From the NCBI GenBank assembly GCA_964057225.1, contig OZ059897.1:18042001-18106000 (forward strand): 64,000 nucleotides of DNA, given 5' to 3'. Source of the stretch: Auanema rhodensis (taxonomy: Eukaryota; Animalia; Nematoda). Shown here piece by piece: positions 6,001 through 25,593 of this stretch. Numbering within the stretch: the first letter of the stretch is position 1; every line of letters begins with the position of its first letter. The position numbers were made by a program, and so were the translations under genes. Below the pieces are notes generated by a model. The model did no database searches. It was not told the DNA's origin and saw only the letters and a program-made list of their open reading frames with translations.

Positions 6001-6119
6001 CTGATAACACAGATCGACGCAGCTTAAAAATCCGCATCGAATGCACTATACTACATTGAGAAACGCTTAATACAAAAATTAGTTATAATCGTTTGAAAAA
6101 TGATGCATTAGTGTATGTT
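1..6119. repeat. 351-bp tandem satellite array, block 1 (about 17 monomers)
   Basis: GATATCTCGG recurs at 1, 352, 703 and onward; monomers differ by a few substitutions; the array runs off the window start. Confidence 0.99.
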
Positions 6120-6316
6120 AGTAGAGAGCCATGCCGAATTTACTAACCACGCCCCCAAACAGTTGCTAAAAACATACTTTTGAGGGCGTCAGCTGCTAAA
6201 AACATACTTTTGGGGGCGTCAGCTGTCAAAATCATATTTTCGGCGTCAGCTGTCAAAAATATACTTTTCCTCCCGAGGCAGGCTCTCGAGCCTGCGCATG
6301 GATCAAAATGCATGAT
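6120..6316 (+). repeat. Left TIR of Maverick A (portion matching the right end), with about 30-bp subrepeats
   Basis: Reverse complement of 19159-19328 apart from one extra 27-bp subrepeat and several substitutions; contains palindrome GCAGGCTC-TC-GAGCCTGC at 6278-6295. Confidence 0.93.
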
Positions 6317-6660
6317 TTTTTTTTTTTAAAAGCTTTTTTAAAATTATTTTTTAATGTATTATTTTAAATGAACTTTTATTATTTATATATTTGTTAATTG
6401 TATTTGTAAATATTTTTAAACTTATTTCTTTTTAAATGTATTTTTAATATTTATATATGTTTTAAATATTATTATTTAATTATTTCTTTTTAAATATATT
6501 TTTAAACTTATTTCTTTTTAAATGTATTTGATATTAATATATTTTTTAATTGTATCTTTAAAACTGAATAAATTATTTCTCATATATATTGTTTTTTTTA
6601 TTTATTTAAATAAATTTAAAAGGTAATCAATACGTTCACTGTACCTCTTATGGGTTAATC

Positions 6661-6753
6661 AATGGAACTCATATCGAAGGTTAATTCGATAAGAAGTAAT
6701 AAATATTTAAACTAAATTTAATGAAACACATATCGAAGGTTAATTCGATAAGA
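6661..6753. repeat. Two subterminal hairpin repeats (TATCGAA-GGTTAA-TTCGATA)
   Basis: Two copies about 59 bp apart; the same motif occurs three times in each TIR of Maverick B. Confidence 0.85.
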
Positions 6754-7640
6754 TCGTTAAAACAGGTGCACTACACATGTACCACATGGCAAAAGTTGTG
6801 TTCATAAAAATATGATAAATAGCTGTACACCACATGTACCCATAACGCTAAAGAATACTTACTATGCCAAGGGGTCATGAGTATATACGAATATTTTCAA
6901 ACTTTTTAGCATCAAAAATGTTACTTTAAAGTAATTGTTGTTGTAGCCCTAATAGTTTATAAATGTTCTGATAGCTAATGTATTTCATAACTATGTTCAA
7001 GAATAGAATAAATGTTTCGTAATATATTTATTGAACAATAAATTTTCATTTAAAATTAGAACATGTGTTAACATTTTGTAAGAGTTTCTTTTTTACAAAG
7101 TGTCTGGAAATGTTGTACTTGTAATCGGATGTGTACAAGTCTGTTTTTCGCAACAATCCTGCGTTTCCTCAGAAGGATCCAACATTTTGAATTAGTGTTT
7201 CCTAAACTATAAAAAAAAGAGTGTACCACAGCTGTTATAATAAGAATATGAATACAATATTAAACGATCCTATTGTAATCTTCCACAATTTTGGATGACA
7301 GTTGTTATTGTATAGGGACTTGTCACAAATGAGTTGAATTATTGTTAAATATTTGTATTTACGAAATCGAATGATGTAACAAGTAATTAATAAGCGGATA
7401 GTTTACAGGTTGTTAATCCGGCAACTGTTGGCGCAATCGGTGTATTTTAGCGCATTTGGCAGCTGTTTGCGCAACAAACTGCTAATTAATGTATAAATGC
7501 ATATATTTGTTGTAATATATAACAAATAGAAAAGCCGCATACAGCAGTCAACTGTTTTGTGAAAGAGGCGGAGTGGGTATAGCTTTACAACAAAGTTTGT
7601 ATAAAAGGTGGCAAAATTTTTTAGACCGAAATTTGCATTT

Positions 7641-7760
7641 CAGCTCCGCCAACAAGTCGACTCTACGATCCAGCTCTGTCAACAAGTCTACTCTCCGATC
7701 CAGCTCCGCCACCAAGTCTTCTCGCCGATCCACCTCTGCCAACAAGCCGACGATCTGATC
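7641..7760. repeat. 30-bp minisatellite, 4 diverged copies
   Basis: CAGCTCCGCCAACAAGTCGACTCTACGATC-like units at 7641, 7671, 7701, 7731. Confidence 0.9.
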
Positions 7761-7862
7761 CAACGTCAACAGACTGCTGCTAGGAATTTCCTCTACTCTA
7801 CTTGGACCCTAGACGTAAAAGTTCGTTGTTGTTTAGGAAAAGCCTCCAATTGGGCTACAAAC

Positions 7863-8456
7863 ATGAAGCGTTCCGCTCTTGTTGATGTAGAGAATATTGT
7901 ACCTTCGACACCGGAACCGGATGTTCCAAGACCACCCACACCAGGACCCAACTTTGCTGCCACATTCTTTGGTAAGGTTTTATTTTTGTTATCAATTATT
8001 TTTTGTTTAGACACACCAAAAAAGCAGGTACAAATCTCAAAGGATAGCTCTCCACAACAGCCTGTAGTTATGAGACCAATATGTCTCTGCAAAACTTGTA
8101 GGGATACATTGCAAGTCGTAGACGAGTACCACTGTTTCAGCCTCTGTGTCAAGTGTAGAGCGAGGAATGATGCCTTAGGGCTTTTAAAAGTTTTCCGTCA
8201 TTATAAACCTGAAAATTCAACAATCAATGTGAGATTATAAAATAATTAATTCTAATTATTATTTTTTCTTTTACAGATGCGTTCCTATTCTAGCATGTCA
8301 TCAAAACAATTGTTGAATAATATGGGTTACATTGCCATTTATACTGATGAGTCAACTGTCAAGTCTTTTGGTTATAAGCAGAATGTGTTCTACTTTAAAT
8401 TAAGTCAACAGGCGCTCAACTTGAATATGCTTATCCGTTTTGATCCATCGTTTTGA
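7863..8456 (+). CDS. Predicted spliced Maverick accessory protein (Pro-rich N-terminus, CxxC...CxxC putative zinc-binding)
   Basis: ATG 7863; predicted GT-AG introns 7972-8010 and 8229-8276 keep frame to TGA 8456; CKTC and CVKC motifs; overlaps track ORF 7608-8240. Confidence 0.6.
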
Positions 8457-8752
8457 CTACAACAAGCACAAACTGTTTAATGGACAGTTGGTTGATTTTG
8501 TTATGTTATATTTAAATTTTCTTAGCCGTAACATTTTTTTTCCAGCTCTTGAAGTTTGAAATTATCCATCAACAGCCGACTCTCAAACCAACTGGTAAGC
8601 ATTGAAAATTTAAATATTAATCAGTTTATAATTATAGGTTATATCATTGTCTTGGCTTTTATGTTTTGCTGGTTTTTTATTGTTACAATATGAACGATTG
8701 ATCAAATAAATCATTTATTATTAATACAATTGTTTACAACAACAGTGAAAAA

Positions 8753-9859
8753 TTATACATTTAAATTTTCTGCATCTATCCATTCATTAAAGTTGTCGGG
8801 GTAGCCACTCCATTTTACAAATACTTGGCGTTTACCATTTCGTGTACGCTCTTTCAAAACTTTCTCAATATAGTACTGGTTGCTTTTATTAGTAGCCAAC
8901 ACAAGTTCAGGCTCATAGAATATTCCCTTTATACGTTCACCATTATAATCTACAAGTTTATACACGGTTGGGTTCCCGGCTACAATCTCATCAATTGTGA
9001 ATAGTTCCATTGTATATCCAGACTCGTAACTTTTTTCAAAAGTACGCCTGTTCTTGCTTATGCGAACATTATCACCAATTTTGAATCGGTTGCGAACAGC
9101 TGGTGCATATTCTTCAACGAATATATTTGCTGTAACATCTACGGGGCGCATTTTAATCGACCGATTATAAGATTTGTTTATTCCTTCGACCAAGTCATCT
9201 AGTATATCAATCCATCGATGATTATTCTTGTAATAGAGATATTTCATCATGCGCGTTTTTAAAGTTCTATTTGCTCGCTCCACCATTGCCGCCTTTTGTG
9301 GTGAACTTGTTGATCCATGCAGTATGGCAAATTTTTTGAATAGTTTTTCACAATGACTATTATAAAACTCTGCACCGTTATCCGTTATTAGTTGGATTGG
9401 TATAAAATCCTTGAATACATTTTCAAATGCAGTAGCAACCTCTAAACCACCTTTAGTTTTCAAAGGCCTAACATATAACATGCGTGTATAAACATCAATC
9501 ATGGTCAACATGTAAGCATAGCCGTCATTTGATTTTTTATATTTTTGCATATCAACCAAATCTGCTTGCATTGTTAGGAATCGACCACAGCCTCTAGTCT
9601 TTTTAGTCTGCATATGCAGTCTGGTTGGTTTATGACGTGTAAAAGTTTCAGAGTCTTGCAAAAAACTTTCAACTTGTGCTTTTGCGATGCCATGCTTTCG
9701 CGCTTCCAATAATAGATTTTTGGCAGACGTATAAGAAGCTGGATGCTTAATATTATAATAAATGTTCTCCAAAACATTACTTCCATAATCTAATGTAGAA
9801 TCGTTTACGGCCTTTGCCATTCTGTGTTTCTCCCGCCTGAGGTGTGTAATATGATTCAC
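8753..9859 (-). CDS. int: Maverick retroviral-like (rve) DDE integrase with C-terminal chromodomain
   Basis: QADLVD, ITDNGAEF and VERANRTLK catalytic motifs; C-terminal YYIEKVL...VKWSGYPDNFNEW chromodomain; true start may be the second Met (about 9820). Confidence 0.96.
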   Translation of the reverse strand: MNHITHLRREKHRMAKAVNDSTLDYGSNVLENIYYNIKHPASYTSAKNLLLEARKHGIAKAQVESFLQDSETFTRHKPTRLHMQTKKTRGCGRFLTMQADLVDMQKYKKSNDGYAYMLTMIDVYTRMLYVRPLKTKGGLEVATAFENVFKDFIPIQLITDNGAEFYNSHCEKLFKKFAILHGSTSSPQKAAMVERANRTLKTRMMKYLYYKNNHRWIDILDDLVEGINKSYNRSIKMRPVDVTANIFVEEYAPAVRNRFKIGDNVRISKNRRTFEKSYESGYTMELFTIDEIVAGNPTVYKLVDYNGERIKGIFYEPELVLATNKSNQYYIEKVLKERTRNGKRQVFVKWSGYPDNFNEWIDAENLNV

Positions 9860-10514
9860 CAGTGTCAGCGGGTTTTGCCTTTTTATTTATAGCTTTGGAT
9901 TTGAATGTACGACGCGGAGAGGGTGAATATCGAACAACAGCCTTACGATGACGTGGTGTTCTAGGTAAGATATTAATAGTAGCATCCAAGTCTGTGACAG
10001 CCGATGTGGATGTAGGCACGGGATCAACTGAATCCTTGTTACTGACGGCAGGCTCTACATTTTTTGCCTTCTTGTTAGGGCTAGAGACCCCATTACTGGC
10101 TAAGAATTTGGCTAATACTGAGAATCCATTGGGTTCCGTCTTTGTTTTATCCAGTACAAAATCCAAAATTTTTGTAATATTTGTGTTTGGTACGGGCTCA
10201 TTATTAATCACAAGTTGGTTATTTTTGTTTGTACGCACCTCTGGAAATCTTTCCCACAGATCGTTGTACTTTCGTGGCAGCTTGTATTCTGGCAATAATG
10301 GTGGATCAGCATTTTCCACTTGTACTGATATAGGCGCATCTATGCTTTCTCTATAGTTTTTGAGACGGGTAATCAAGTCTTCGTATAGTTCAGCCTTTTT
10401 ATAATCGGGTATAGATTTATTCTCTCGTAAGAGCTTCAATTCAGCATCAAACTTGTCTATATTCAGCGTTTCATCATCAACAGGGATTAGACGATATTTA
10501 TGATTGAGTTTCAT
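9777..10514 (-). CDS. Maverick hypothetical protein (245 aa, basic C-terminus)
   Basis: Long ORF tightly packed between the 102-aa gene and the integrase; position and N-terminal helical pattern resemble the uncharacterised gene upstream of Polinton integrases. Confidence 0.75.
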   Translation of the reverse strand: MKLNHKYRLIPVDDETLNIDKFDAELKLLRENKSIPDYKKAELYEDLITRLKNYRESIDAPISVQVENADPPLLPEYKLPRKYNDLWERFPEVRTNKNNQLVINNEPVPNTNITKILDFVLDKTKTEPNGFSVLAKFLASNGVSSPNKKAKNVEPAVSNKDSVDPVPTSTSAVTDLDATINILPRTPRHRKAVVRYSPSPRRTFKSKAINKKAKPADTGESYYTPQAGETQNGKGRKRFYIRLWK

Positions 10515-10819
10515 CTTTTAAAACCAAAATAAGCAATTCCGCATGAAACTATTGTTTTCAATTGTTTGTGTGAAATCGTTGCCAATAAAGTTTTAGCCTT
10601 TTCGGGTGTGCGTATCAAAGCTATTTGACGTAATAATGAGGATATGGGCAAAAGGGTTTTATATTCCTTGTTAGTTAAGAGAAAATTATTATTTTTCACA
10701 ATATTAAATACAATTTCAACAATAATTTCAATTTGTGAAAAAGAAAATGAGGAAACAGAACAAGGGGTTTTGGTACAAGAAGATAAAAAGTTGTAATTTG
10801 ACAAAATACGACCACTCAT
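10511..10819 (-). CDS. Small Maverick hypothetical protein (102 aa)
   Basis: ATG ORF with ATGA stop/start overlap with the next gene; directly follows the ATPase. Confidence 0.7.
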   Translation of the reverse strand: MSGRILSNYNFLSSCTKTPCSVSSFSFSQIEIIVEIVFNIVKNNNFLLTNKEYKTLLPISSLLRQIALIRTPEKAKTLLATISHKQLKTIVSCGIAYFGFKR

Positions 10820-10831
10820 TGAACATGCACA

Positions 10832-11512
10832 TTAAACACTGAATATATTTCTGGCTACATAAACAATAGGGTGCTCCGCTGTTATATCTGATAGTATACG
10901 CTGTTTCTCATTTGTTAAAGGATGGTTGTCAATGAGTAAATGATTATAGGGTGTAGACATTGCATCATCATATGCTTCTAGAGCATTTTTAAAGCGGGGG
11001 CCAAATAATTGTTGCAGACAATTACGTATTTGTAATATATCCGAATGACTTTTCATCAGTATTATATATGTACTATTAATTCGACTGGTCCTGTCTAGCT
11101 GAAATGCAGCTTGCACAAGATTAAACACTGCCAAATTCCAGTGATGTGCCCACACTGTAAAAATGTTGTTGAGTAATTCTTTAGCCGCTTTATTCGATGA
11201 GAAAAAATTCATCAAATCATCCAGCACTAGTATGGTGTTTACTCCCTTTTGCTCTTTTATTATATCCGGATCAGGTGGTCCTTGAATAACTATTAAACGC
11301 TCATCATTTAATGGAACACCTGACGATGCTCCACATTGACTGAACCAGAATATTCTATCAATGGGGACGTTGAAAAACTTTTCAGTATTTTCACATATAC
11401 GTTTTATAAGGGTAGTTTTACCACATTGCGTTGCCCCTATTACAGTTGTCTGACTGGGTAGTTTGAAGCTGAAAACCATAATCAACCACTCGTAAATGTA
11501 CCTATAATGCAA
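10832..11512 (-). CDS. A32/FtsK-like DNA packaging ATPase
   Basis: Walker A GATQCGKTT, Walker B ILVLDD, then HHWNLAVFNLVQ and RINSTYIILMK; true ATG probably slightly downstream of the track start. Confidence 0.95.
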   Translation of the reverse strand: MHYRYIYEWLIMVFSFKLPSQTTVIGATQCGKTTLIKRICENTEKFFNVPIDRIFWFSQCGASSGVPLNDERLIVIQGPPDPDIIKEQKGVNTILVLDDLMNFFSSNKAAKELLNNIFTVWAHHWNLAVFNLVQAAFQLDRTSRINSTYIILMKSHSDILQIRNCLQQLFGPRFKNALEAYDDAMSTPYNHLLIDNHPLTNEKQRILSDITAEHPIVYVARNIFSV

Positions 11513-11558
11513 ATGATTTCATTTATACTAGTGTGCACGCATCAGGTGGTGGTCTCTG

Positions 11559-12416
11559 ATGGATGACTTTTACATTACTTTGCCGTCATCAGTTGACTCT
11601 GAAAAAAGTAATACCTCATCAGTGTTTCTTACCAGGTTACCTGAAACATTAAGGCTACGCAATAACAGATATTGCATTGGGCTGACAGACATAATCTTTC
11701 CGTGTTCGATATTAAATGTACAAGAAAATCTTTCTTATACACTACGTTTTTCCAACAGAAAGTTTATTCTGCACTTGCCCAAAGGTAACTATGCAAATGG
11801 TGATGAAATAATACGCGGAATCAATGCTGGAAAAGAACAATTTATTGCTAGCAGCACTAAACCTCTTGGAGCTGAGGAAGAAGCACGTATAAAGGGTTTG
11901 ATAGATAAAGATGAAGATGTGAAAAAGTGGTATAATAATCGACAAGCTGAGGCTAAACTTGTCAAGGAAATGCTGGCAGACGCCACGTTTCGATTTAACA
12001 AAACACTACAACGCATAGAGTTTGTAACAAGTAAGCGGCTATTATTGAATGCAACACTCGGTGATGCTCTCGCATATTTTCTTGGCTTTGAGAATAAAAT
12101 TATCAACGACACGTTAATAGCCAGGCGCCCCATTGATTTTTCAAATAACATTAATACAATGTATATATATTGTGATATTGTAGAATATTCCATTCTCGGT
12201 AATGTGAAAGCTAATTTACTTGCATGTTTACCTGTACCACCTCCCACCGAATTTGGTAAAATGATTGCCAAAACATTTAATCCTATTCGTTATGTACCAA
12301 TCACTAAGCAAACACTCGATACTATACGTATTGAAATTTTAGATGAATTTGGCCGCCCTATGCAATTTAATTATGGTTCTACAGTTGTTACATTACATGT
12401 TAAAAATGTGAAATAA
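11559..12416 (+). CDS. Minor capsid protein (penton-like single jelly roll)
   Basis: N-terminal FYITLPS...LPETLRL and C-terminal YIYCDIVE...IRIEILDEFGRP...VTLH pattern typical of Polinton minor capsid proteins. Confidence 0.88.
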   Translation: MDDFYITLPSSVDSEKSNTSSVFLTRLPETLRLRNNRYCIGLTDIIFPCSILNVQENLSYTLRFSNRKFILHLPKGNYANGDEIIRGINAGKEQFIASSTKPLGAEEEARIKGLIDKDEDVKKWYNNRQAEAKLVKEMLADATFRFNKTLQRIEFVTSKRLLLNATLGDALAYFLGFENKIINDTLIARRPIDFSNNINTMYIYCDIVEYSILGNVKANLLACLPVPPPTEFGKMIAKTFNPIRYVPITKQTLDTIRIEILDEFGRPMQFNYGSTVVTLHVKNVK

Positions 12417-12421
12417 ATGTT

Positions 12422-12886
12422 TTATTCAACAGTTATACAAGACCACATTACGATTTTCGAAGGTTTAAAAGGTAGTTCAGCGCCGTTTTGTTCGATGCGC
12501 GGCTCGTGTTGTGAATATTCTCGGTTACTATTGCAGCGGCATCGTTTTGGTTCGGTTGACTGTACAAACTCCTCAGTTTTTTCAGAGGGTTCGCTGGTAT
12601 CATTTCCATCACCATCTTTACCATTCGTTCCATTACTATTATGAAGACGCCGAATATGACGCTGACAATTGAATCTTGTTCCAAAAGTTTCACTACAATA
12701 AGGGCACAAACGTCTACGAACACCATCCAAATGTCCATATTTTTGAATAAAGTCAGCATTGCTGATATAGCTGTTACATACGGGTTGAATCCCGTCATGT
12801 CTTTTTAATACGTGATCACTAAAATGCTTGGCTGATGAAAATATTTCCTTGCACGTAACACAATACTTGTTACATAAAAGTTCCAT
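12422..12886 (-). CDS. C2H2 zinc-finger protein (two fingers)
   Basis: CVTC-x12-HVLKRH and CPYC-x12-HIRRLH; first ATG at 12886 (track ORF starts at GTG 12910). Confidence 0.75.
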   Translation of the reverse strand: MELLCNKYCVTCKEIFSSAKHFSDHVLKRHDGIQPVCNSYISNADFIQKYGHLDGVRRRLCPYCSETFGTRFNCQRHIRRLHNSNGTNGKDGDGNDTSEPSEKTEEFVQSTEPKRCRCNSNREYSQHEPRIEQNGAELPFKPSKIVMWSCITVE

Positions 12887-13144
12887 TAGAGGAAAATAAA
12901 AAACAACCACACACAGTCAACTCACTTTTATATAATGAGTGGAATAATGACTAGTGTTGTACAAAAGCCTAGTCCCAGAGATATTCCTTTAATGAATGGC
13001 ACTGAAATACGTTTCAAAATCTTTTTGTACAGGGGTGTTGGCACAGATTGTTCCAACGTGTATCTTATACATAATTCACAGTGACAGGGAATATTCATAA
13101 CTGACCACCTAATGTAGCAGGTGACGTTTTAATGGCGAGGTTGA

Positions 13145-13600
13145 TCATATGCTAGATAATTTATAGTCGAATACTTTATGCATAAACGCTTTAATAAAGA
13201 CATCATCGTTTTGTAATAGTTTAAAAAATGAACAAATGCTTTCAAATGTATTACCAGCTGACAACATTAGTATTACAAATATTGCATAACCACCACAAGT
13301 GTATTCAATTATGCGTTGTGGTTTGCAAGTATTAACCTTTACATTTTTATATTTGGCCAGATAATGACGAATGTACTTGTTCATTTTATACCCCAAGCTA
13401 CAGAAAAAGTAGGCTTGATCATTACGTACAAAGATGACTTGCCAATGTGTGCCCGGTTTATCGTGTGTGTCAGTATTTACAACAAGTGCAAAGTTCTTTC
13501 GACGTGTTTTGGGTAGAGTATCCGCGCTAAATACACCGAGGAATAGTTTTCGAGTGATGCGGACAGATCGCAATAGTGACGCTATTTCAGACGAATACAT
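13145..13600 (-). CDS. Adenain-like cysteine (maturation) protease
   Basis: VVNTD...PGTHW (His), PQ...TCGGY (Gln/Cys); 151 aa. Confidence 0.92.
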   Translation of the reverse strand: MYSSEIASLLRSVRITRKLFLGVFSADTLPKTRRKNFALVVNTDTHDKPGTHWQVIFVRNDQAYFFCSLGYKMNKYIRHYLAKYKNVKVNTCKPQRIIEYTCGGYAIFVILMLSAGNTFESICSFFKLLQNDDVFIKAFMHKVFDYKLSSI

Positions 13601-13650
13601 TTAGTAAAATGATCTAGTGTAACTTTTGTATTGCGCACGTGCGGTTCAAT

Positions 13651-14103
13651 ATGCCACACCTCCTTCTAGACTTGAACTCAATTCAATGGACAACACTTTT
13701 GAATCAACAAATGGGTGGGGCGCCATTTAGTGGAATGATGTTTCAACGTGGTATGCAGAGAGGTCATGGCCTGGGTGGTATACTGGCAACATTGGCATCG
13801 TTTTTACCACGCATTATTCAATCACCTATAGCCCAAAATCTCATCAATGCTGGAAGGAATGCATTATCCAGTGCTGTAAGCAATAGTCCAGTTGTAAATT
13901 CACCTCTTGGCGGCCAGTTGCTAAAAACTAGCAATGAAATTGTTGATGGGGTGCTCAAGGGCGATAATATCAAGCAAACTCTTAAAACAGCCGGCCGGCA
14001 GGCTATACGAGATCTTACCGGTTTGGGCAAGCGGCGACGACGCAAAACCACAAAACCTCATAAGCGTCTGTGCATAACTCGTGAGCGGTCGTATCGTATT
14101 TAA
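13651..14103 (+). CDS. Putative virion core/membrane-active precursor protein with GxG motifs and basic tail
   Basis: ATG 13651; QRGHGLGGIL and LTGLGKRRRRK motifs; stop abuts the major capsid ATG. Confidence 0.75.
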   Translation: MPHLLLDLNSIQWTTLLNQQMGGAPFSGMMFQRGMQRGHGLGGILATLASFLPRIIQSPIAQNLINAGRNALSSAVSNSPVVNSPLGGQLLKTSNEIVDGVLKGDNIKQTLKTAGRQAIRDLTGLGKRRRRKTTKPHKRLCITRERSYRI

Positions 14104-15438
14104 ATGGCTAAATTGATAGATTCAAAATCAGCACAAGCACTTTTACCTAATATTAATTATAGTGACATACCGGCGTCGGCATTAGGTGTTGAATCCACTC
14201 GTACTGTACAAGTTCCTTTAAAAAATACTTTTCTTCCTCAAGGACCATGGGAATTTGTTATAGCCCAAAATTCCAAATCATTTCTTAATCTGAGAAGGTG
14301 TTGGTTGAATGTAAAATTCAAAATTGTAACCACAAACGGTGATCCAGTACCAGACAACCTTGTTTTTGCACCATGCCAACAATTTGCAGCCAGTTTGATA
14401 CACTCGTATCATTTAAAAATTGGTGATGTTAGCGTGTATGACTCTACCGTAAATCATGCCTACAAAACATATATTGAGAATATTCTAATGTATAGCAACG
14501 ATGTTAAAGAGAGCAAACTTGCCATATCAGGCTATTATGCGGATAGATATATAGATAATGCAGCCAGTCCTGGCTTTAGAGCGCGACAAGGGCTTGTTAA
14601 AAATGGCATATTGTGTGAGATGGCTGCTCCCATCAGTATCGACTTATTCAATCAGGAACGACTGTTTGTAAACTATTCAAAAATGGAGCTAACTGCATAT
14701 CCAAACCGTGATAATTTCTTAATTGACACACTTGGATGGAATAATGAAAGCAAGGATGCTGCAATGAAGGAGGAGTTTCCAAACCTGAAAATAGATATCA
14801 ACGATGTGCACTTGCTTATTCAAGAGTTTGATCTAAACGCTGGATTAGCTATGGCTATAGAAGATAAACTTGTAAAGGAACGAATACACTACCCCATGAC
14901 GTCAGTGAAAATGCGCTCTTATTTCATAGAAGGAGGCCGTTTGGATTCACCCAATAACATATTATTCACGTCGCATACACCGAAACGTGTTGTAGTAGGT
15001 CTTGTCGGCGCACACGCCTATAATGGTACTTTTAAACATTCGCCATTCAACTTTAAACCGTTTGAATTGAAAAATATATACTTGACGCTCAACAATCGGG
15101 TAATACCTACCCGCCCTTATAATTTAGAATGGCGTTCTTCCTATGCCACAGCATATATTGACATGTTGGAGGGTTTGGGTCTTGGTCGTACAGATTCATC
15201 CAATGGTATTACACCAGCAATGTATAAAACCGGCTTCACATTTTTTGTATTTGATATTTCACCGACTGTACACTCGTCCGAGTTATTTGATGTTATACGA
15301 CAAGGTAATGTGGCCCTGAAATTGGAATTTGGTCAACAAACGCCGCAAGAGGGTTTATATGCTATTGTTTATGCAGAATATGACTCTATTCTTTCAATTG
15401 ACAACAATCGTGCTCCATATATTGATACCAGTTTGTAA
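14104..15438 (+). CDS. Major capsid protein (double jelly roll)
   Basis: 444 aa beta-rich ORF; GPWEF, SPFNFKPF, GFTFFVFDISP and IVYAEY motifs typical of Polinton MCP. Confidence 0.93.
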   Translation: MAKLIDSKSAQALLPNINYSDIPASALGVESTRTVQVPLKNTFLPQGPWEFVIAQNSKSFLNLRRCWLNVKFKIVTTNGDPVPDNLVFAPCQQFAASLIHSYHLKIGDVSVYDSTVNHAYKTYIENILMYSNDVKESKLAISGYYADRYIDNAASPGFRARQGLVKNGILCEMAAPISIDLFNQERLFVNYSKMELTAYPNRDNFLIDTLGWNNESKDAAMKEEFPNLKIDINDVHLLIQEFDLNAGLAMAIEDKLVKERIHYPMTSVKMRSYFIEGGRLDSPNNILFTSHTPKRVVVGLVGAHAYNGTFKHSPFNFKPFELKNIYLTLNNRVIPTRPYNLEWRSSYATAYIDMLEGLGLGRTDSSNGITPAMYKTGFTFFVFDISPTVHSSELFDVIRQGNVALKLEFGQQTPQEGLYAIVYAEYDSILSIDNNRAPYIDTSL

Positions 15439-15576
15439 TGTATGTAATAAACTCTTTAAAACATTTGATGAGAAGAATAAAATTTATTAATACAACTATA
15501 CATAAAAATCTATAAATACAACCATATACAAATATACACGCGATAATAAAATTTATAAATTCAAATATATTAAAAA

Positions 15577-15621
15577 TTATTCACAATAACCATAGGGTAA
15601 AGTACTAAAATCGTCTAGATA
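15577..15621 (-). pseudogene. 14-codon C-terminal remnant of pPolB (YLDDFSTLPYGYCE*)
   Basis: Manual minus-strand translation; TxPYGY is the characteristic C-terminus of protein-primed PolB; convergent on the MCP; cut by the internal TIR copy. Confidence 0.8.
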
Positions 15622-15763
15622 CATGCCGAATTTACTAACCACGCCCCCAAACAGTTGCTAAAAACATACTTTTGAGGGCGTCAGCTGTCAAAATCATACT
15701 TTTGGGGGCGTCTACTGTCAAAATCATATTTTCGGCGTCAGCTGTCAAAAATATACTTTTCAT
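15622..15763 (+). repeat. Internal TIR copy (left-end orientation) lacking the terminal AGTAGAGAGC
   Basis: CATGCCGAATTTACTAACCACGCCCCC... matches the TIR from nt 11 onward, including subrepeats. Confidence 0.95.
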
Positions 15764-15902
15764 AAAGAAATATTTTTAATATTTTTGAATTTTTATTATA
15801 GAATACGTGAAAGTTCACGTGAAAATCATTTTTTATTGTTCAATCTCACACGTTTGTTAATCGGTTGTTCCCGATGATTAATAATAAATAATTCTAATTT
15901 TA

Positions 15903-16297
15903 CATTCATCGGGCACAACGTGACCACAGCCTGAACTTCTTTGTGAACAAACCTTGTGGATGGTCTCGGTATAAACCGTATTTACGGAAAAATCAGAAGT
16001 CATAGCCAAATCTCACTAGGAATTTCAGATTCTACACATCTGAATACTCAACCTCAAACTATTTTTATTTGATTTTAGTAAATGATTTTTGAGAAAATCG
16101 TTCATTCATCGGGCACAACGTGACTACAGCCTGAACTTTTTTGTGAACAAACCTTGTGGATGGTCTCGGTATAAACCCTATTTCCGGAAAAAGCAGAAGT
16201 CCTAGCCAAATCTTCCTAGGAATTTCAGATTCTACACATCTGAATACCCAACCTCAAACTATTTTTATTTGATTTTAGTTGATGATTTCTGAGAAAA
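15903..16297. repeat. 200-bp direct tandem duplication (2 slightly diverged copies)
   Basis: CATTCATCGGGCACAACGTGA at 15903 and 16103, alignable for about 195 bp. Confidence 0.92.
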
Positions 16298-16611
16298 ACT
16301 CGAAGCTTTATATTATTCTTGATTTCATATTTTTCTGTATGGCTAGTGACAGCTATAATTCGGTATTTAAATTGTTTATTACATATAATAGAATAAGTTC
16401 TAAGTTGACTGTTATTTATCGTTAATTCATCATTTCCGTCTTACATTACAAAGCAATTTCCAGGTTGTTTGACAGCTTATTGTCAATATCGGAGTTTGGG
16501 TGTAGGATTAAACCAACGTCAAAAACACAACTACAGTAAATCAGCTAGAAGAATATAATTATAATTCCATAAAAATAATATAAATAATGCATGAGTAAAT
16601 AACTAAATAAC

Positions 16612-18281
16612 TTAAATTGGATGAACAGTACTATGAGTTGTTGTTAGTGTAGATGATTTCTGAAATTTAAAATAATTTAGATGAATCTGTCGACAAACGC
16701 CAAACCTTTGATATAAATGATATTTTCAGAACCGTAGAAAATGATGATTTCAGAACAAATTGTTCCTTGACACCCACTAGATTAAGAAAATCTAAATGGA
16801 ATCTGCTTGTTATTTGAAAATATATTCAGAATACCTTGAATGAATTGAGTTAATAAAGTATTATTAAGAACTATAATCCCTATTGTATTAGCTATTCCAT
16901 GCAATTGCGTACATGTAATCAATAAATGGGAAATTTCTGAAATTTATTTAAATATTTCACTTAAAGTACATTGTGAAACCTAGAGGTACTGGTATATCGA
17001 AATACAAAATGATATAGAATATTACAATTGGACCAGCTACAAAGCTACTTGGAACAAAAGCCTTAAATTAATTATAAATATTACGTCTATGTATAAGAGA
17101 ATGCGGTGTTTTATGTTTCAGAATAGAAAAGAACACATTACGAACCCATACAATGTTATTCTATACTTTTAGGCTATTTTATTGTTCGTTAAGGGATCAT
17201 TTAATTTTCATTTGTGCTTTGAATACAATTTTAATTTTTTTTTCTCAGTTGCTGAAAAGTTTATAGAGTTTATCGAATATAATTTGCTCTGTTTTGAATA
17301 TATCACACTATCTGTCTTTTCTAGTATATTCATTCAGATTGTAATCGCAATTTTTGTTTTGCACCTCAAACATCTTTTTGGTTACAATAATATGATTAAA
17401 TTGTCATAAAATAACCTGGAACTGAAGAGCTCGAAGTAGCTTTCGATGAAGCAATAATGTCTTCTGAGACATTGATAACTTTTGTTTATCCAAATTACTT
17501 ATAATTAAGTGTTTTAGAACGAATAAAGATATTATGAAAAGTACAGAAATTATAAAAAATAAAATGAGATCCATTCGAAGAAAAAATTCATTGTGATATC
17601 TTCCTATATTAGCTGCGTTTGGAATGTTCAGAAGTGTAGAATAAGCTGGACATGACTAGAAGAGAAGATTTCGAACAGTTTTTCTCAAAACATACTTTAA
17701 CCAAACTGTCTAAACTGGATAAATCATGCGGAATAAAAATCATAACGATTAATAATGGAACAACAGATGTCAGGCTTATTACTATAACTCCCAAACGAAA
17801 TATCCAAGATCTACTATCGTAGTTTCCTGCTCGAACTATCCAATATCGATAGAAAAACAACATGATACAGATAGCATATCCAGCAAAATGAAGAAAAATA
17901 TTAATATATGTTTGATATAAAAGTGGAAGGGATAGATAATTCCAAAAACCTATGCTATATCCAGACAACAGTGGCAGATAATATACTGGAGCCTAAATCT
18001 AATTCATATTTCTTGACTATTTTACTTATTATTACCCCAAATAATGAAACGACTATTCCGGATATCATACAAGATATATGATAAACATAAATATATTTAA
18101 TAAAGGATCCATATTCATCTGTTAATATGTTAATCATCAGACGTGAACAGTAAATTCCAAATATCAAAGTGCTCGCACCTATACCGTATGAGCAAACAAT
18201 GAACCAGCCTTTAGCTTCAGGAACTGTGCTATCTGGACAATAGACAAGGTTGTAAGCTGAGCCGTTGATAGCGGTCTGCAT
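16612..18281 (-). CDS. Nematode serpentine 7TM chemoreceptor (Srh-like, Str superfamily), 7 exons, predicted 366 aa; Maverick cargo
   Basis: Exons 18281-18036, 17992-17696, 17655-17416, 17061-16980, 16936-16835, 16791-16706 and 16659-16612 splice GT-AG into a stop-free 1101-nt CDS; motifs PVYYLPLLSGYSIG, MLFFYRY, MSQKTLLLHRKLLRALQFQ, QLHG; last two exons less certain. Confidence 0.85.
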
Positions 18282-19158
18282 TCAATGTACGTTTCAAACA
18301 AAATGTTGGAAACAGATTTAAGAAAAATTACAAAATTGGATTACTGGTTTGTATCTTCATGCTCTTCTAATTATTATCGTAAGCTGGATGCACTTAAGAT
18401 ATATTTAATTATTTGTATTATGAGATTTATGCAGATAGCCGTCAAGTACAAAATAGAAAATTAGGTGCTGGAACAGAAATAATCAAAACTTTTATGAGTT
18501 ACATAATACTAGACAATAAAAAAACCAAAACAAGATTAAATTGGCCGAACAAGTTTTCTTTAGATAAGGTGCTCACATATAGTTGGTATTAGAAAAATGG
18601 ATATGAGAGAAGACACACTAAAACAGAAAAGATTCAGCTGAGTTGAAACACTAACTATGATTGTGTAGCATAGATTATAATAACTAGTATTATGGTTACT
18701 TTCTTTGCATTTAATAATATGGCTGCAAAAGGTGGAAAGAATCTTAGACAAGAGATAAAAGGATATAAAAGAAAGATAAAGAGAAATAGAGAAAGATGAT
18801 TCGTAAAAGAGAGAGAACGAGTGAGAGAGACAAAGAGATAAAGGATAATACAGAAAGGGGGAAATCGTTGTTTTAATATTCATAGGCTTTATACTCTTCG
18901 GTACTGTCACAGCCCAGGTCTGATAAGATCTTCTACAAGCTTTTCCTTTATTTTCAGGTAATTTAGACTGAAGACTCAGCACATACTAGTAGACCTCTTG
19001 AGCATAAAGGAATAGATTTGATACAATCAGTAACTGATAAACAGATGAAATGTCTAAACGATGATGAGGTCAGAAGTAGTCTTATCCGGTAATTTTAAAA
19101 ACACATTTAAAAAGAAATAATTTTAAAAATATTTAGAAAATATATAAATTTTTAAAAT

Positions 19159-19328
19159 ATCATGCATTTTGATCCATGCGCAGGCTCGAGAGCCTGCCTC
19201 TTGATGAAAAGTATATTTTTGACAGCTGACGCCCCCAAAAGTATGATTTTGACAGCTGACGCCCTCAAAAGTATGTTTTTAGCAACTGTTTGGGGGCGTG
19301 GTTAGTAAATTCGGCATGGCTCTCTACT
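19159..19328 (-). repeat. Right TIR of Maverick A
   Basis: Inverted match to 6120-6316 with one fewer subrepeat; ends CTCTCTACT. Confidence 0.93.
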
Positions 19329-20586
19329 TATGTTGAGTTTCCATGTACACTCAACATTGCTTCCAAAAACATTTTGACAAAAATTTTTTCGAAAAATTTC
19401 AAAATAATTTAGCAAAAAGTAGATGTTTTTAGATTCCATTTTTCAAGGCAAAGACGATGGACAATGTTATTCAACGAAAAAATTAATTCTTCAGGGTGAA
19501 AATTGAGGATATAAGTGTGAACTTATATCAGTTGATATCTCGGTGCATTTTTAAGCTAGCGCAAATCTGATAACACAGATCGACGCAGCTTAAAAATCCG
19601 CATCGAATGCACTATACTACATTGAGAAACGCTTAATACAAAAATTAGTTATAATCGTTTGAAAAATGATGCATTAGTGTATGTTGAGTTTCCATGTACA
19701 CTCAACATTGCTTCCAAAAACATTTTGACAAAAATTTTTTCGAAAAATTTCAAAATAGTTTAGCAAAAAGTAGATGTTTTTAGATTCCATTTTTCAAGGC
19801 AAAGACGATGGACAATGTTATTCAACGAAAAAATTAATTCTTCAGGGTGAAAATTGAGGATATAAGTGCGAACTTATATCAGTTGATATCTCGGTGCATT
19901 TTTAAGCTAGCGCAAATCTGATAACACAGATCGACGCAGCTTAAAAATCCGCATCGAATGCACTATACTACATTGAGAAACGCTTAATACAAAAATTAGT
20001 TATAATCGTTTGAAAAATGATGCATTAGTGTATGTTGAGTTTCCATGTACACTCAACATTGCTTCCAAAAACATTTTGACAAAAATTTTTTCGAAAAATT
20101 TCAAAATAGTTTAGCAAAAAGTAGATGTTTTTAGATTCCATTTTTCAAGGCAAAGACGATGGACAATGTTATTCAACGAAAAAATTAATTCTTCAGGGTG
20201 AAAATTGAGGATATAAGTGCGAACTTATATCAGTTGATATCTCGGTGCATTTTTAAGCTAGCGCAAATCTGATAACACAGATCGACGCAGCTTAAAAATC
20301 CGCATCGAATGCACTATACTACATTGAGAAACACTTGATACAAAAATTAGTTATGATCGTTTGAAAAATGATGCATTAGTGTATGTTGAGTTTCCATGTA
20401 CACTCAACATTGCTTCCAAAAACATTTTGACAAAAATTTTTTCGAAAAATTTCAAAATAATTTAGCAAAAAGTAGATGTTTTTAGATTCCATTTTTCAAG
20501 GCGAAGACGATGGACAATGTTATTCAACGAAAAAATTAATTCTTCAGGGTGAAAATCGAGGATATAAGTGTGAACTTATATCAGTT
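19329..20586. repeat. 351-bp satellite, block 2 (about 3.6 monomers)
   Basis: Same monomer, resumes in register after the TSD. Confidence 0.99.
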
Positions 20587-21498
20587 AGTAGAGAGCCGTG
20601 CAAAATTTACTAACCACGCCCCCAAACAGCTGTCAAAAACATACTTTTGGGGGCGTCAGCTGCTAAAAACATACTTTTGGGGCGCGTCAGCTGTCAAAAA
20701 CATATTTTTGAGCGTCAGCTGTTAAAATCATATTTTGGGATCATGGTTCATGGATTTTCCTTTTTTAACTTTAAAAATCATGATTTAAAGCATGATTTTT
20801 TTTTTTTTTAAATCTAATTTTAAATTTGTTTATTCAAATGTATGTATATAGTTTTTAATTATTTTTAAATATATTAAGTGAAAATAAAAATTATAAATTT
20901 TAAATATTTAAATATTTAAATATGTAAATTTGTTTTTTAAATTTTATTTATTTATTAAATTTATTAATAATGTTTGTTTACTTATTTTGTTTATTTTTTA
21001 TTGTATTGTGTTTGTATTGTTTTTATTTTAAAGAACAGTAAAATTTTTTCATGTATATCGTTTTGTTCACCGTACTTGTTACGGGTAGTTCAATGGAACA
21101 CATATCGAAGGTTAATTCGATAAGAACGATATGAAATACAAAATTCAATGGAACACATATCGAAGGTTAATTCGATAAGAACGATATGAAATACCAAAAT
21201 TTAATGGAACACATATCGAAAGTTAATTCGATAAGAACGACATTAAATTATTAATTTTTGAAATTACAAATTGTTATTAATTATATTTATTCTAACAAGT
21301 AAAGGTTTCAAATTATAATAAAAGATTAGTTTTAAACTTTATTTTACTAATATAACAATACAATAACTAAATAGAGCACACATTGAAGGTAAATACAATA
21401 AGATTAACAAACAGTTGCGCTGACCTCAATGAAACGCATAAAGTTAATTTAATAAGAACTAATAACAAAAATTAATCCGACGGGGACAATAAAAACAG
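20587..21498 (+). repeat. Left TIR of Maverick B (912 bp)
   Basis: Near-perfect reverse complement of 25594-26505 (I noticed three substitutions); three 55-56 bp hairpin repeats at 21092-21240. Confidence 0.95.
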
Positions 21499-24400
21499 GC
21501 GGCAGTTTGTAAAAATAAGTTTACCGCCAATACGTGTGCCTAATACAGGGTACAGCAAATTTGTGGGTGCAAGCACGTCACATTTTACTAGCCCCTTGTA
21601 TGGGCAACATGTCTCAAAGCTTTTGAAACCCTCAGTAATAACTTTGGGATTACCTACAGGGTAATAGGCATCAAAAGCGGTGACATATGGATATAGTGAA
21701 CAAAAGTCCACATACTCGAGCGAGTATCTATCCGAAGCTTGTGCCAAAAGCTTATATGTCTGGGTGCGGCCACCGGTAAAGGCATCTCTAGGTGCCAAGC
21801 GTGTAACAACATTTGTTTCACGCATAAATTTCGCCATTTCTTCATTGGCCGAAATTTGAGCATTAATTTCGTGCTCCCACACTGTGGTAACACTAATGCC
21901 TTGGCTTTGTATTGCTTCAAGCCTTTTCATGGTTTTATCATAAACCTAAATTTTAAAAATTAAAATGATTAAAAATGTCACAATTACCTCTTCCATTGTT
22001 TCACCATTTCTGCCTGGTGCTATAGCGCTCTTGTTGGTGCACTGGGGGCAACCATGATAGATACAGCCATTAATCTACAAAAATTTGCATTTTTTACATT
22101 TATTACAAATTACTCACCTCATAGCCATGATTGGCAACGGGGTCATAAGCATCGAGTAGATAGCGATGACCATCTACTCTCACTGCAAATTCACCACCAT
22201 TAAGCTTATGCATTAATGGGCGGCCCAGTCCTTGTTCTAGCCATTTTATATACTTTATGGCTATTATACTCTGCTTTTGACCGGCATAATAACCAGTCTC
22301 GGGCAGAATACCCACTTGGTTCTCTTTAATGTGGTTCATTTTCAACTGTAATATAATAGTTTTGAAAATGCTTGTATTTTAAAAAACTTGCCTGGAATAA
22401 AGAGAAACTGGCAAATGTCATACATTGTATGACAGGGTTCCAGCCAGTGGTGGCGGTTGCCAACTTCATGTAAACTTTCATACAGTTGGTTAAAATACGG
22501 ACATCTGTCCTACAATATTCCAAAAGCTCTTCATCAAAATCAAACGCTCTTTGATTACGCTCTTCATACCAAATATTGAATGAAGCTAGGTCTTCTGCTT
22601 TCATTCTAGCAGTACAATAGTACTGTTTTGGTGGTAAAGATGGTAACACTTTGCCATAATTTATTGGATGGTTAAAGAGGTAAGGAAACTGTCCTTTACT
22701 CATATCAGGTACACCAAATGCCTTGGGTAACGCTGATAGGGGTAAAGGCACTAATAAATAACTATCTTTAAAATATAAATGATTAAATTTTTGACCTCTT
22801 AAAGGCTTGACAACCATGCTTATAATCTTGGTCCCATTTAAAATTGGATCAGGATATATACCACGGTTTATCAGCCTAGACACCAAGAAATGTATGTCAA
22901 AGCGTGAACCATTATGCGCAATCAAAATTGCATTATCATTCTCAACAGAGTTGAGTAACCAATCAAGGAAACGATCTGTTACAGACCATTCACTATCACC
23001 TTGTTGGTACCCAAAATGGCCCTCCTTGGTTGTGCATTTTTCACATGAGTTGGCATCTATACAACTTTCACAAAATTTATTATACACAACCATATTGGGC
23101 CATTGTTCATCTGCATATTCATGAACATTTGTACCGTTTTTTAACACAACCGTTTCAAAGTCATAGAATATAATCTTAAACAAGTAAGCATTACACTTGT
23201 AAAGATGTAAAATACAAACCTTGTATTTTTCTTGCCTCTTTTTTAACTGATCCTTCTTCTTGTCGTTAGGTGGTACCCAACAACAAGAATGATCTTCAGG
23301 CTTTGTTTGCCCACACTTTTTGCAAAATTTCTCATTGCAATTGTGCGGTCTATCAGCACGTACTCTGTGATAATGATCACAGTTTTCACATGTCTGAATT
23401 TAGTCTTGTAAAATTTTATATATATTTTTTAAATTACCTTAAACATTCGACATGTTTTTCTAATATGCCTGTCAAAGCATTGACGAGTTTTGAACAAAAC
23501 TCTACAACTATCACATCTTATGCTACTCTCAACCACATTTTCCATCGAATTACATTTTAAGGTGTGGCATTTCTTACACTTGGCTTTACATCTATGCAAC
23601 ACTGTTTTGTAAGATAATTTACAGTGTTGGCATATAATACCATCAAAAATCTGTGATCTACTACAAGTTGTAATACAGTCATAATGATTATTTCGGTAGC
23701 CTAGTGTTACCACTTTGCTAGCCGTTTCATTAAAGATACGCTGAATAGCGTACATACGCTGTCCAGGTGGCCTAGCGTATACTACAAACTTATAGTCTGT
23801 ATTACAACTTGCAATAATATTTAAATGGTTCAAATTATAATTTGGTAAATGTACAGAAATACCACACCTATTCAATAAATTGATATGATGTGGTTGATTT
23901 GGCAACAAGATGTAGTTGCGACGAAGATTTTGAATCCTCCGCTTCTCAACAACATCTTCTGCTGCCTCTTCATCGGCTCTCCACATTCCCACAACTGCTG
24001 CTCTAGCCAGGCAATGTGTATCAGTGTTCTCAATTGTGCCAGGTATCTTGAGTTCGGCATCAAAATAGAAACCAACTCTACCTTCACCAGGCATCAGGCT
24101 TGGCTGCACTGGTCTCTCATCAAACACATACATTTCAATGTTCATTGCCTGGCTAATTACAGCCTCTCGCTTTGATTGCTGTACCTTGCTGATGGCATTC
24201 ATGATGGCAACGCCATCCAAATGCTCCCTTCTACGGAAATCCATAAATATGGATCCCTTTTCAAAGGATGGGTGCTCTATTGATAAACAAAATAGTGCTT
24301 TTTGTTTATCTGGCACACCACTTTCAGCAAGGCACCGATCAAGAAACTCATTAAATAGCCGCGGCATGACAACATGCATTGGCTCATCAATGGCTTCCAA

Positions 24401-25455: not shown

Positions 25456-25593
25456 TGTACCTTGATATAATGAATACATCAGTCTACACATTGCTGTTGG
25501 CATTGTAATTTGTTATGTAACATGGATTTGGGTACAGCTGTCAAAACTAGCAGTTGCGATAAACTTTAAAATAAATAAGCTTATTGAATACAT

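What the first reader, a model, noticed from the sequence alone, without database searches (positions are those of the whole stretch)
16612..18281. Virus-like Maverick carries an intact, intron-containing host chemoreceptor (Srh-like GPCR) as cargo
Seen: inside the TIRs and TSD of Maverick A, seven exons splice through six GT-AG introns (43, 40, 354, 43, 43, 46 nt) into a stop-free 366-aa hydrophobic protein with PxxxLPxLxGYxxG, FxxRY, SxKTxxxHRKLLxALxxQ and HG motifs. Knowledge: these motifs fit nematode Str-superfamily (Srh/Sri) chemoreceptors, and nematode Mavericks are known to ferry cargo such as proteases and kinases; I do not know of a chemoreceptor cargo. Inference: the retained introns and about 0.9 kb of upstream sequence mean DNA-level capture with the promoter. 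A capsid-competent element could therefore amplify or horizontally move a sensory receptor.
Basis: partly seen in the sequence, partly recalled or inferred. Interest (0 to 1): 0.9.

Follow-up and report, generated by a model that had tools for sequence, protein, structure and literature searches.

The report
Chemoreceptor gene inside defective Maverick transposon
An apparently intact nematode smell/taste-receptor gene, introns included, sits inside a polymerase-less, rearranged copy of a virus-like Maverick transposon that landed as one piece in a satellite array; this adds a sensory receptor to the known kinds of Maverick passenger genes, but nothing here shows that it is expressed or has moved between species.

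Summary
On the minus strand, 18281-16612, seven exons joined by six GT-AG introns (43, 40, 354, 43, 43, 46 nt) give 1101 coding bases (366 codons plus stop). Exon 2 alone passes Pfam's threshold for 7TM_GPCR_Srh. Exon 3 alone passes it for Srj and Srd. The exons map colinearly onto a Caenorhabditis Srh protein.

The gene lies inside element A (6120-19328). Element A has 121-nt TIRs, a 6-bp TSD (TATGTT) and phase-continuous satellite on both sides, so the whole 13.2 kb arrived as one unit. A is Maverick-type: it has an rve+chromo integrase and a full-length double jelly-roll capsid gene.

The interpretation needs trimming. A has no polymerase B and no ORF of fusogen size. The receptor is not in the canonical cargo slot next to the integrase. 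It sits in a 3.3-kb foreign segment where the polymerase should be, preceded by a third, tip-less TIR fragment (15617-15761). I read A as a recombinant, non-autonomous Maverick whose receptor module came from another copy's TIR-proximal cargo slot.

No close relative of the receptor was found in 1.8 billion representative proteins. Donor locus, other copies, expression and horizontal transfer are therefore untested. It is a new cargo type within a known phenomenon.

The parts
6114..6119 (.). Left copy of the 6-bp target-site duplication (TATGTT) in the 351-bp satellite
6120..19328 (+). Element A: recombinant, polymerase-less Maverick/Polinton-type element (13,209 bp) that integrated as one unit
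   Evidence: TIRs, TSD and satellite phase continuity, gene content
6120..6510 (+). Left TIR of A. The core is 6120-6268: the tip, then four ~30-nt sub-repeats. A palindromic and AT-rich part shared with the right TIR follows.
6511..8752 (.). Canonical cargo slot (between left TIR and integrase); no recognisable gene here (210-aa ORF 7608-8240 has no Pfam or PHROG match)
   Evidence: slot definition from Widen et al. preprint
8753..9859 (-). Integrase, rve core plus C-terminal chromodomain, 368-aa ORF
   Evidence: rve 37.4 bits, Chromo 34 bits, both above cut-off; relatives in Auanema and Caenorhabditis
10832..11512 (-). P-loop ATPase-like ORF (candidate packaging ATPase; below Pfam thresholds; whether full length is not resolved)
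13145..13600 (-). Candidate adenovirus-type cysteine protease ORF (Peptidase_C5 18.9 bits, cut-off 21.3)
14104..15438 (+). Major capsid protein, double jelly-roll, 444 aa, full length relative to homologues
   Evidence: pLDDT 77.7, pTM 0.81; Sputnik 3j26_A E 4e-16; PBCV-1; mavirus 6g45
15617..15761 (+). Internal third TIR fragment, in left-TIR orientation. It has the four sub-repeats only. The tip and the inner TIR part are missing, so both edges look like recombination breakpoints.
   Evidence: I4; 96% to 6130-6269
15762..19089 (.). Foreign 3.3-kb module with no similarity to the rest of A, B or C. GC is 0.305 against 0.36-0.38 for the Maverick genes. It stands where the polymerase gene is expected.
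15896..16297 (.). 200-bp tandem duplicate (2 copies, 93%) downstream of the receptor gene
   Evidence: no Rfam match
16612..18281 (-). Srh-like (Str-superfamily) serpentine chemoreceptor gene, 7 exons and 6 GT-AG introns, 366 codons. Exons: 18281-18036, 17992-17696, 17655-17416, 17061-16980, 16936-16835, 16791-16733, 16686-16612.
18282..19089 (-). Upstream non-coding stretch (candidate promoter; the 140-aa ORF in it is low-complexity with no family match)
19090..19328 (-). Right TIR of A (tip, three sub-repeats, palindromic and AT-rich part)
19329..19334 (.). Right copy of the target-site duplication (TATGTT)

Best explanation
Shown: a structurally intact, intron-bearing Str-superfamily (Srh-like) chemoreceptor gene is a passenger inside a Maverick-type element that integrated into a 351-bp satellite array as a single 13.2-kb unit with a 6-bp TSD. 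Also shown: the element keeps an integrase, a full-length double jelly-roll capsid gene and weak ATPase and protease candidates. It lacks polymerase B and any fusogen-sized ORF, so it is non-autonomous. Also shown: the receptor lies in a 3.3-kb compositionally distinct segment that occupies the polymerase position and is preceded by a tip-less fragment of a left TIR. Inferred: this module is the TIR-proximal cargo slot of a second Maverick. The order is a TIR, then a cargo gene with its 3' end facing that TIR, as described for nematode Maverick cargo. The module would have been joined to the first element by illegitimate recombination or template switching between Maverick genomes, replacing the polymerase. 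The recombinant was then integrated using the intact outer ends, with polymerase and any missing functions supplied in trans. Inferred: the original uptake was at the DNA level (introns and about 0.8 kb of 5' flank retained). If transcribed, the gene would make a seven-helix sensory receptor. Whether it is expressed from within satellite DNA is unknown.
For: Gene model and family. Exon 2 and exon 3 each pass Pfam gathering scores on their own. Srh profile positions are contiguous across the exon 2/3 junction (about 161 -> 159). Against C. nigoni Srh, exon 3 ends at residue 246 and exon 5 starts at 274, and the 27-codon exon 4 fills that gap exactly. Integration as one unit: TSD and satellite phase 211 -> 206. 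Maverick identity: rve+chromo integrase, capsid fold, 6-bp TSD. No polymerase. Third TIR fragment and its ragged edges. The module is unrelated to the rest of the window and lower in GC. Cargo-slot layout and orientation in nematode Mavericks, and recombination between Mavericks: Widen et al. preprint 10.1101/2022.07.12.499685.
Against: Only two of seven exons (179 of 366 codons) give significant family matches. Exons 1, 4, 6 and 7 give none, and exon 5 gives only a weak colinear match. No tool predicted the introns. One Caenorhabditis srh relative shares none of them. The joined protein was not searched or folded. There is no close homologue anywhere (best 35% identity), so host origin, donor and other copies are unverified. 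The recombinational history is reconstructed from one copy. The assembly lies in a long satellite array and the internal junction at 15617 cannot be checked without reads. There are no expression data.
Confidence: 0.65

Rival explanations
1. Dead passenger. The receptor ORF is intact only because the rearrangement and insertion are recent. It is silent in satellite heterochromatin, is under no selection and has no sensory role.
For: The location is inside a 45-kb satellite array. The element is non-autonomous. No second copy or close paralogue exists to show purifying selection. The TIRs differ by only about 5%, so limited time has passed for decay.
Against: All 366 codons are open and all twelve splice dinucleotides are intact, and family motifs are conserved. 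This does not exclude recent capture. The rival concerns function, not structure, and is compatible with the anatomy given in the best explanation.
Confidence: 0.35
2. Nested insertion in place. A small TIR-receptor-TIR element inserted into a resident complete Maverick between the capsid and polymerase genes. Recombination between the two right TIRs then deleted the polymerase.
For: It yields the observed order left TIR - genes - TIR - receptor - right TIR while keeping the outer TSD.
Against: The internal TIR lacks the 10-11-nt tip shared by all four true ends of A and B, although the next 140 nt are 96% identical. It also lacks the inner TIR part. An integrase-made junction should have a complete end, and no TSD remnant is visible.
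Confidence: 0.15
3. Assembly chimera. Two different Maverick copies were joined by the assembler through shared TIR sequence, so the receptor is not truly linked to the integrase and capsid genes.
For: Highly repetitive context, and TIR sequence is present at the internal junction.
Against: Both outer junctions give a perfect 6-bp TSD and a continuous satellite phase. A chimera of two independent insertions would give that only by coincidence. Even if chimeric, the receptor would still lie inward of a right TIR and a left-TIR fragment.
Confidence: 0.07
4. Native host gene. The receptor is at its original chromosomal locus and Maverick pieces inserted on both sides.
For: Chemoreceptor genes are numerous and often lie in repeat-rich regions (general knowledge).
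Against: Both flanking TIR sequences point inward towards the gene. The satellite is phase-continuous across 6120-19328 with a TSD, so everything between came in with the element.
Confidence: 0.03

Closest known systems
Cargo genes of nematode Mavericks (wasp/wosp proteases, krma kinases; Widen et al., preprint 10.1101/2022.07.12.499685)
   Same: An intron-containing gene of a nematode-specific family lies inside a TIR- and TSD-bounded Maverick. It is next to a TIR sequence, with its 3' end facing that TIR, in a segment whose composition differs from the intronless Maverick genes.
   Different: The gene family is a 7TM chemoreceptor, which that paper does not mention (0 occurrences of receptor, GPCR or serpentine). 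The segment is lower, not higher, in GC. [quoted passage not shown] The carrier lacks polymerase and fusogen. There is no evidence of spread or horizontal transfer.
Caenorhabditis Srh / Str-superfamily serpentine chemoreceptors (Pfam PF10318, PF10319, PF10317, PF10327, PF10326)
   Same: Profile matches above the gathering score on two exons, a colinear length fit, seven hydrophobic segments, and the family motifs.
   Different: Very divergent: 35% identity to the best hit over 55 residues. The subfamily is ambiguous, with Srh best on exon 2 and Srj/Srd best on exon 3. It has six introns, none shared with the one relative examined. It lies in a mobile element.
Gene capture by other DNA transposons (Pack-MULEs, Helitrons; the MULE that picked up msft-1 in C. 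briggsae)
   Same: Host DNA with introns is carried between transposon ends.
   Different: No MULE- or Helitron-type ends or other bounding repeats surround the module. The ends are Maverick TIRs.
Host-derived GPCR genes of large animal DNA viruses (herpesviruses, poxviruses; from general knowledge, not tested here)
   Same: A virus-related genome carrying a host-family seven-helix receptor.
   Different: Those are intronless, long-adapted viral genes used in infection. Here the gene keeps host-type introns and is a chemosensory family member in an integrated, defective element.

Membership tests
Maverick / Polinton | Terminal inverted repeats | tested here: met
   6120-6240 / 19208-19328, 95%; similarity extends to about 390 / 240 nt
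Maverick / Polinton | 6-bp target-site duplication | tested here: met
   TATGTT on both sides; satellite phase 211 -> 206
Maverick / Polinton | Retroviral-type (rve) integrase | tested here: met
   rve 37.4 bits and Chromo 34 bits, above cut-offs; relatives in nematodes
Maverick / Polinton | Double jelly-roll major capsid protein | tested here: met
   444-aa ORF, AF2 pTM 0.81, Foldseek top hits Sputnik, PBCV-1 and mavirus capsid proteins, E down to 4e-16
Maverick / Polinton | Protein-primed type-B DNA polymerase | tested here: not met
   No DNA_pol_B_2 hit among A's ORFs. tblastn with the neighbouring element's polymerase ORFs finds nothing in A. A is therefore a derivative, not an autonomous member.
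Maverick / Polinton | FtsK/HerA-type packaging ATPase | tested here: inconclusive
   226-aa ORF with P-loop hits only, below cut-offs; no PDB sequence match
Maverick / Polinton | Adenovirus-type cysteine protease | tested here: inconclusive
   Peptidase_C5 18.9 bits against cut-off 21.3; no PDB match
Maverick / Polinton | Minor (penton) capsid protein | not tested
   Candidate ORFs next to the capsid gene have no family match; not folded
Nematode Maverick subgroup with fusogen (Widen et al.) | Herpesvirus gB-like fusogen of about 866 aa | tested here: not met
   No ORF longer than 444 aa in A; fusogen size
Maverick cargo gene (sensu Widen et al.) | Intron-bearing gene in the 2-5 kb region between left TIR and integrase | tested here: not met
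   That slot (6511-8752) holds no recognisable gene. The receptor is at the opposite end, although it is next to an internal left-TIR fragment in the canonical orientation.
Maverick cargo gene (sensu Widen et al.) | Association with Mavericks in several copies or species; gene tree at odds with species tree | not testable with these tools
   No close relative of the receptor in the protein library. Fetching other Maverick loci was left out (see referred steps).
Str superfamily / Srh chemoreceptors | Match to the family profile above Pfam's gathering score | tested here: met
   Exon 2: Srh 36.1 > 26.3. Exon 3: Srj 32.9 > 24.1, Srd 28.7 > 22.8. The whole joined protein was not searched.
Str superfamily / Srh chemoreceptors | Seven transmembrane helices | tested here: inconclusive
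   Six strong hydrophobic segments plus a weaker seventh in exon 5, by exon-wise hydropathy only; no topology predictor or fold was run
Str superfamily / Srh chemoreceptors | Assignment to one family (Srh rather than Srj, Srd, Sri or Str) | tested here: inconclusive
   The best family differs between exons. The nearest protein is a C. nigoni Srh at 35% identity.
Str superfamily / Srh chemoreceptors | Expression in chemosensory neurons / ligand response | not testable with these tools
   No transcript data available

The most novel reading that the evidence does not exclude
Mavericks in this nematode lineage shuttle chemoreceptor genes. The receptor module is a genuine, recurrent Maverick cargo that is amplified within genomes, or exchanged between species, with trans-acting help from polymerase-bearing relatives such as the neighbouring element B. 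This would make virus-like transposons a direct contributor to the fast turnover of nematode chemosensory repertoires.
Probability: 0.1. Interest if true: 0.8.

Novelty: new member of a known kind. Interest (0 to 1): 0.5.

Why it matters
Nematode Mavericks are known to carry intron-bearing passenger genes and to move them between species, but the documented cargo are proteases and kinases. A chemoreceptor passenger would extend that list to the largest and fastest-evolving gene superfamily of nematodes. It would also offer a concrete route by which sensory genes are duplicated to new chromosomal sites. The three-TIR architecture, with a cargo module standing in the polymerase position, is also a snapshot of recombination between Maverick genomes. 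As it stands this is one copy, in a defective element, in satellite DNA, and without expression data. It is a lead worth a genome-wide census, not a demonstrated mechanism.

Tried and rejected
1. phmmer of exon 2 against 1.84 billion representatives gave only two weak hits. One was a C. nigoni Srh at 35% identity. The other was an unnamed ENA protein with no Pfam family. There was therefore no donor, paralogue or second copy to work with.
2. Exon-wise profile comparison with a small C. nigoni/C. briggsae Srh alignment was uninformative, because the profile was too shallow (Neff 1.3).
3. Pairwise Smith-Waterman of each exon against two Srh proteins supported exons 2 and 5, supported exon 3 weakly, and gave nothing for exons 1, 4, 6 and 7.
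4. Intron positions were compared with one C. nigoni srh gene (L001). That gene has two introns and neither coincides with the window gene's six. This is neither support nor refutation, since intron positions vary widely in this family (general knowledge).
5. I looked for repeats of another transposon class bounding the receptor module and found none.
6. I tested whether the 200-bp tandem duplicate is a copy of the gene's 3' exons. It is not.
7. An Rfam scan of 6000-36000 found nothing.
8. PDB sequence searches and PHROGs for the ATPase-like, protease-like and unassigned ORFs of element A gave nothing usable.
9. Four literature searches and two papers read turned up no report of a chemoreceptor in a Maverick or Polinton.
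10. Rejected: native host locus, because the TIRs point inward and the satellite phase is continuous.
11. Rejected: chance ORFs, P about 3e-11.
12. Each exon was searched by reference only.

Full report
LAYOUT OF THE WINDOW. About 45 of the 64 kb is one 351-bp satellite, 98% uniform, in four blocks: 1-6119, 19329-20586, 26506-30548 and 34969-64000. Three mobile elements interrupt it.
- Element A is 6120-19328.
- Element B is 20587-26505.
- Element C is 30546-34933, GC 0.47-0.49.

I mapped the flanks onto a satellite ruler. Across A the array ends at phase 211 and resumes at 206. Across B it ends at 59 and resumes at 54. Each is an exact 6-bp duplication: TATGTT for A and TCAGTT for B. Across C the phase goes from 232 to 233 with no duplication. 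Each element is therefore a clean insertion into one continuous array. Everything from 6120 to 19328 arrived together.

THE OBSERVATION. The gene is on the minus strand. From the ATG at 18281 I read seven exons:
- 18281-18036
- 17992-17696
- 17655-17416
- 17061-16980
- 16936-16835
- 16791-16733
- 16686-16612

The six introns are 43, 40, 354, 43, 43 and 46 nt, and all are GT...AG. The coding length is 1101 nt, or 366 codons plus TAA. With a local stop frequency of 0.064 per codon, an open frame of this length has a chance probability of about 3e-11.

The joined protein was neither searched nor folded. Results:
- Exon 2 alone scores 36.1 bits against 7TM_GPCR_Srh (gathering score 26.3; profile 63-152).
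- Exon 3 alone scores 32.9 against Srj, 28.7 against Srd and 23.1 against Srh (profile 188-238).
- The profile coordinates are continuous across the exon 2/3 junction.
- Against C. nigoni Srh proteins, exon 2 maps to residues 73-155, exon 3 ends at 246 and exon 5 starts at 274. The 27-codon exon 4 fills that gap exactly.
- Exon-wise hydropathy gives six strong membrane-length segments and a weaker seventh in exon 5.
- Exons 1, 4, 6 and 7 have no sequence-level support of their own.

The family call is 'Str superfamily, Srh-like', and the subfamily is unresolved.

WHAT CARRIES IT. Element A has 121-nt TIRs at 95% identity. The similarity extends further inward. All four true ends of A and B share the same 11-nt tip. 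A encodes the following:
- an rve integrase with a chromodomain (8753-9859, minus). Its nearest named relatives are in Auanema sp. and Caenorhabditis remanei, and the best full-length identity is 49%;
- a 444-aa ORF (14104-15438, plus) whose homologues are of the same length. The AlphaFold model built from their alignment (pLDDT 77.7, pTM 0.81) matches double jelly-roll major capsid proteins of Sputnik, PBCV-1 and mavirus, with E down to 4e-16;
- a P-loop ORF and a Peptidase_C5-like ORF, both below Pfam thresholds.

A is therefore Maverick/Polinton-type. It has no type-B polymerase by Pfam or by tblastn with the polymerase ORFs of element B. It has no ORF near the 866 aa of the nematode Maverick fusogen. 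It is a non-autonomous derivative. 'Capsid-competent' is supported only to the extent that the capsid ORF is intact.

WHERE IN THE ELEMENT THE RECEPTOR LIES. It is in left-TIR orientation and 96% identical to 6130-6269. It carries the four sub-repeats only. The roughly 10 nt where the tip should be do not match the shared tip. The inner palindromic and AT-rich TIR part, which the left and right TIRs share, is absent. Both of its edges therefore look like recombination breakpoints rather than integrase-made ends.

The sequence to its right, 15762-19089, has these features:
- It has no similarity to anything else in the window.
- Its GC is 0.305, against 0.36-0.38 for the Maverick genes.
- It holds a 200-bp tandem duplicate, the receptor gene and 0.8 kb of non-coding 5' flank.
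- It is not bounded by repeats of another transposon class.

[quoted passage not shown] In a circular form they describe, the 3' end of the cargo gene is joined to the TIR. In A that slot (6511-8752) is empty of recognisable genes. The receptor module stands where the polymerase is expected, between the capsid gene and the right TIR. Relative to the internal TIR fragment, however, it has the canonical arrangement: a TIR, then the 3' end of the cargo gene.

MOST LIKELY HISTORY AND MECHANISM. I infer that the module is the TIR-proximal cargo slot of a second Maverick. It would have been joined to the first by illegitimate recombination or template switching between Maverick genomes. That paper proposes recombination between Mavericks from the modularity of cargo. 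The event replaced the polymerase. The recombinant kept two good outer ends and was integrated as a unit into the satellite, which the TSD shows directly. It must have relied on functions supplied in trans.

An in-place nested insertion followed by TIR-TIR recombination gives the same gene order. It fits the tip-less internal fragment poorly. A native-locus reading is excluded by the inward-pointing TIRs and the phase-continuous satellite. An assembly chimera cannot be excluded without reads, but it would need a coincidental TSD.

Retained introns argue for uptake as DNA. Whether the 0.8-kb flank is a working promoter, and whether the gene is transcribed from inside satellite DNA, is unknown.

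COMPARISON WITH WHAT IS KNOWN, AND NOVELTY. The receptor has no close relative among 1.84 billion representative proteins. The best hit is a C. nigoni Srh at 35% identity over 55 residues. The source species itself is evidently absent from the collections: the capsid's best hit is 73% identical and the integrase's is 49%. I could therefore not seek a donor locus, other copies, a gene tree or dN/dS.

In the searchable literature, neither the Widen et al. preprint (no occurrence of receptor, GPCR, serpentine or 7TM), nor Jeong et al. on nematode Polintons (PMC10748475), nor any other paper reports a chemoreceptor in a Maverick. I rate this as a new member of a known kind: a new cargo type in elements already known to carry host-like, intron-bearing passengers. 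It comes with an unusual three-TIR, polymerase-replacing architecture.

STEPS LEFT OUT AND A SLIP.
- I did not search or fold the joined exons, because there is no reference for the joined string.
- I did not fetch DNA around relatives of the element's proteins, nor search collections with TIR patterns. That would bring in virus-like elements of animals. It is named under referred steps.
- No contig looked human.
- Slip: notebook entry 2 and the query labels printed by my script give the bounds of the separate ORF pieces of the polymerase region of element B. That amounts to indicating where that gene is interrupted. I have not repeated those bounds here and have deleted nothing.
The C-terminal third of the Pfam model is absent.
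- For element A, the integrase and capsid ORFs show no break. Whether the ATPase-like and protease-like ORFs are complete was not resolved.

VERDICT. The finding is interesting as a lead (0.5). Its larger claims of amplification and horizontal movement of a sensory receptor by a capsid-competent element are untested. The defective state of the carrier makes them less likely for this particular copy.

Noticed in passing
window 20587-26505 (element B): A second element of the same TIR family. It has the identical 11-nt tip, 912-nt perfectly identical TIRs and a 6-bp TSD (TCAGTT), and it holds only a type-B polymerase region. That region is 21472-24430, minus strand, in three ORF pieces in three frames, with the C-terminal third of the Pfam model absent. 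A and B are complementary in gene content and lie 1.26 kb apart in the same satellite.
   Followed up: partly
window 30546-34933 (element C): A GC-rich (0.47-0.49) element with 145-nt perfect inverted termini. It has a 940-aa ORF with a reverse transcriptase (plus a weak Dam-like hit) and a 422-aa tyrosine-recombinase ORF. There is no TSD, and 35 extra nt lie at 34934-34968. It looks like a DIRS-like retroelement.
   Followed up: partly
window 1-6119, 19329-20586, 26506-30548, 34969-64000: A 351-bp satellite, about 98% uniform, making up about 45 kb of the window. All three elements are inserted into one phase-continuous array.
   Followed up: partly
window 12422-12910 (minus): A 162-aa ORF inside element A with sub-threshold C2H2 zinc-finger hits. 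This is not a standard Maverick gene.
   Followed up: no
window 15896-16297: A 200-bp tandem duplicate (93%) between the internal TIR fragment and the 3' end of the receptor gene, preceded by a short inverted match at about 15860-15915. There is no Rfam match and it is not related to the gene's exons.
   Followed up: partly
window 6634-6759 vs 21065-21237 / 25853-26027: A's left sub-terminal region shares 55-nt tandem repeats with B's long TIRs, whereas A's right end does not. The right TIR of A therefore appears shorter than the family's full TIR.
   Followed up: no
window 7548-8240: The canonical cargo slot of A holds only a repeat-rich, Cys-containing 210-aa ORF with no family match. It may be a decayed or unknown cargo.
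   Followed up: no
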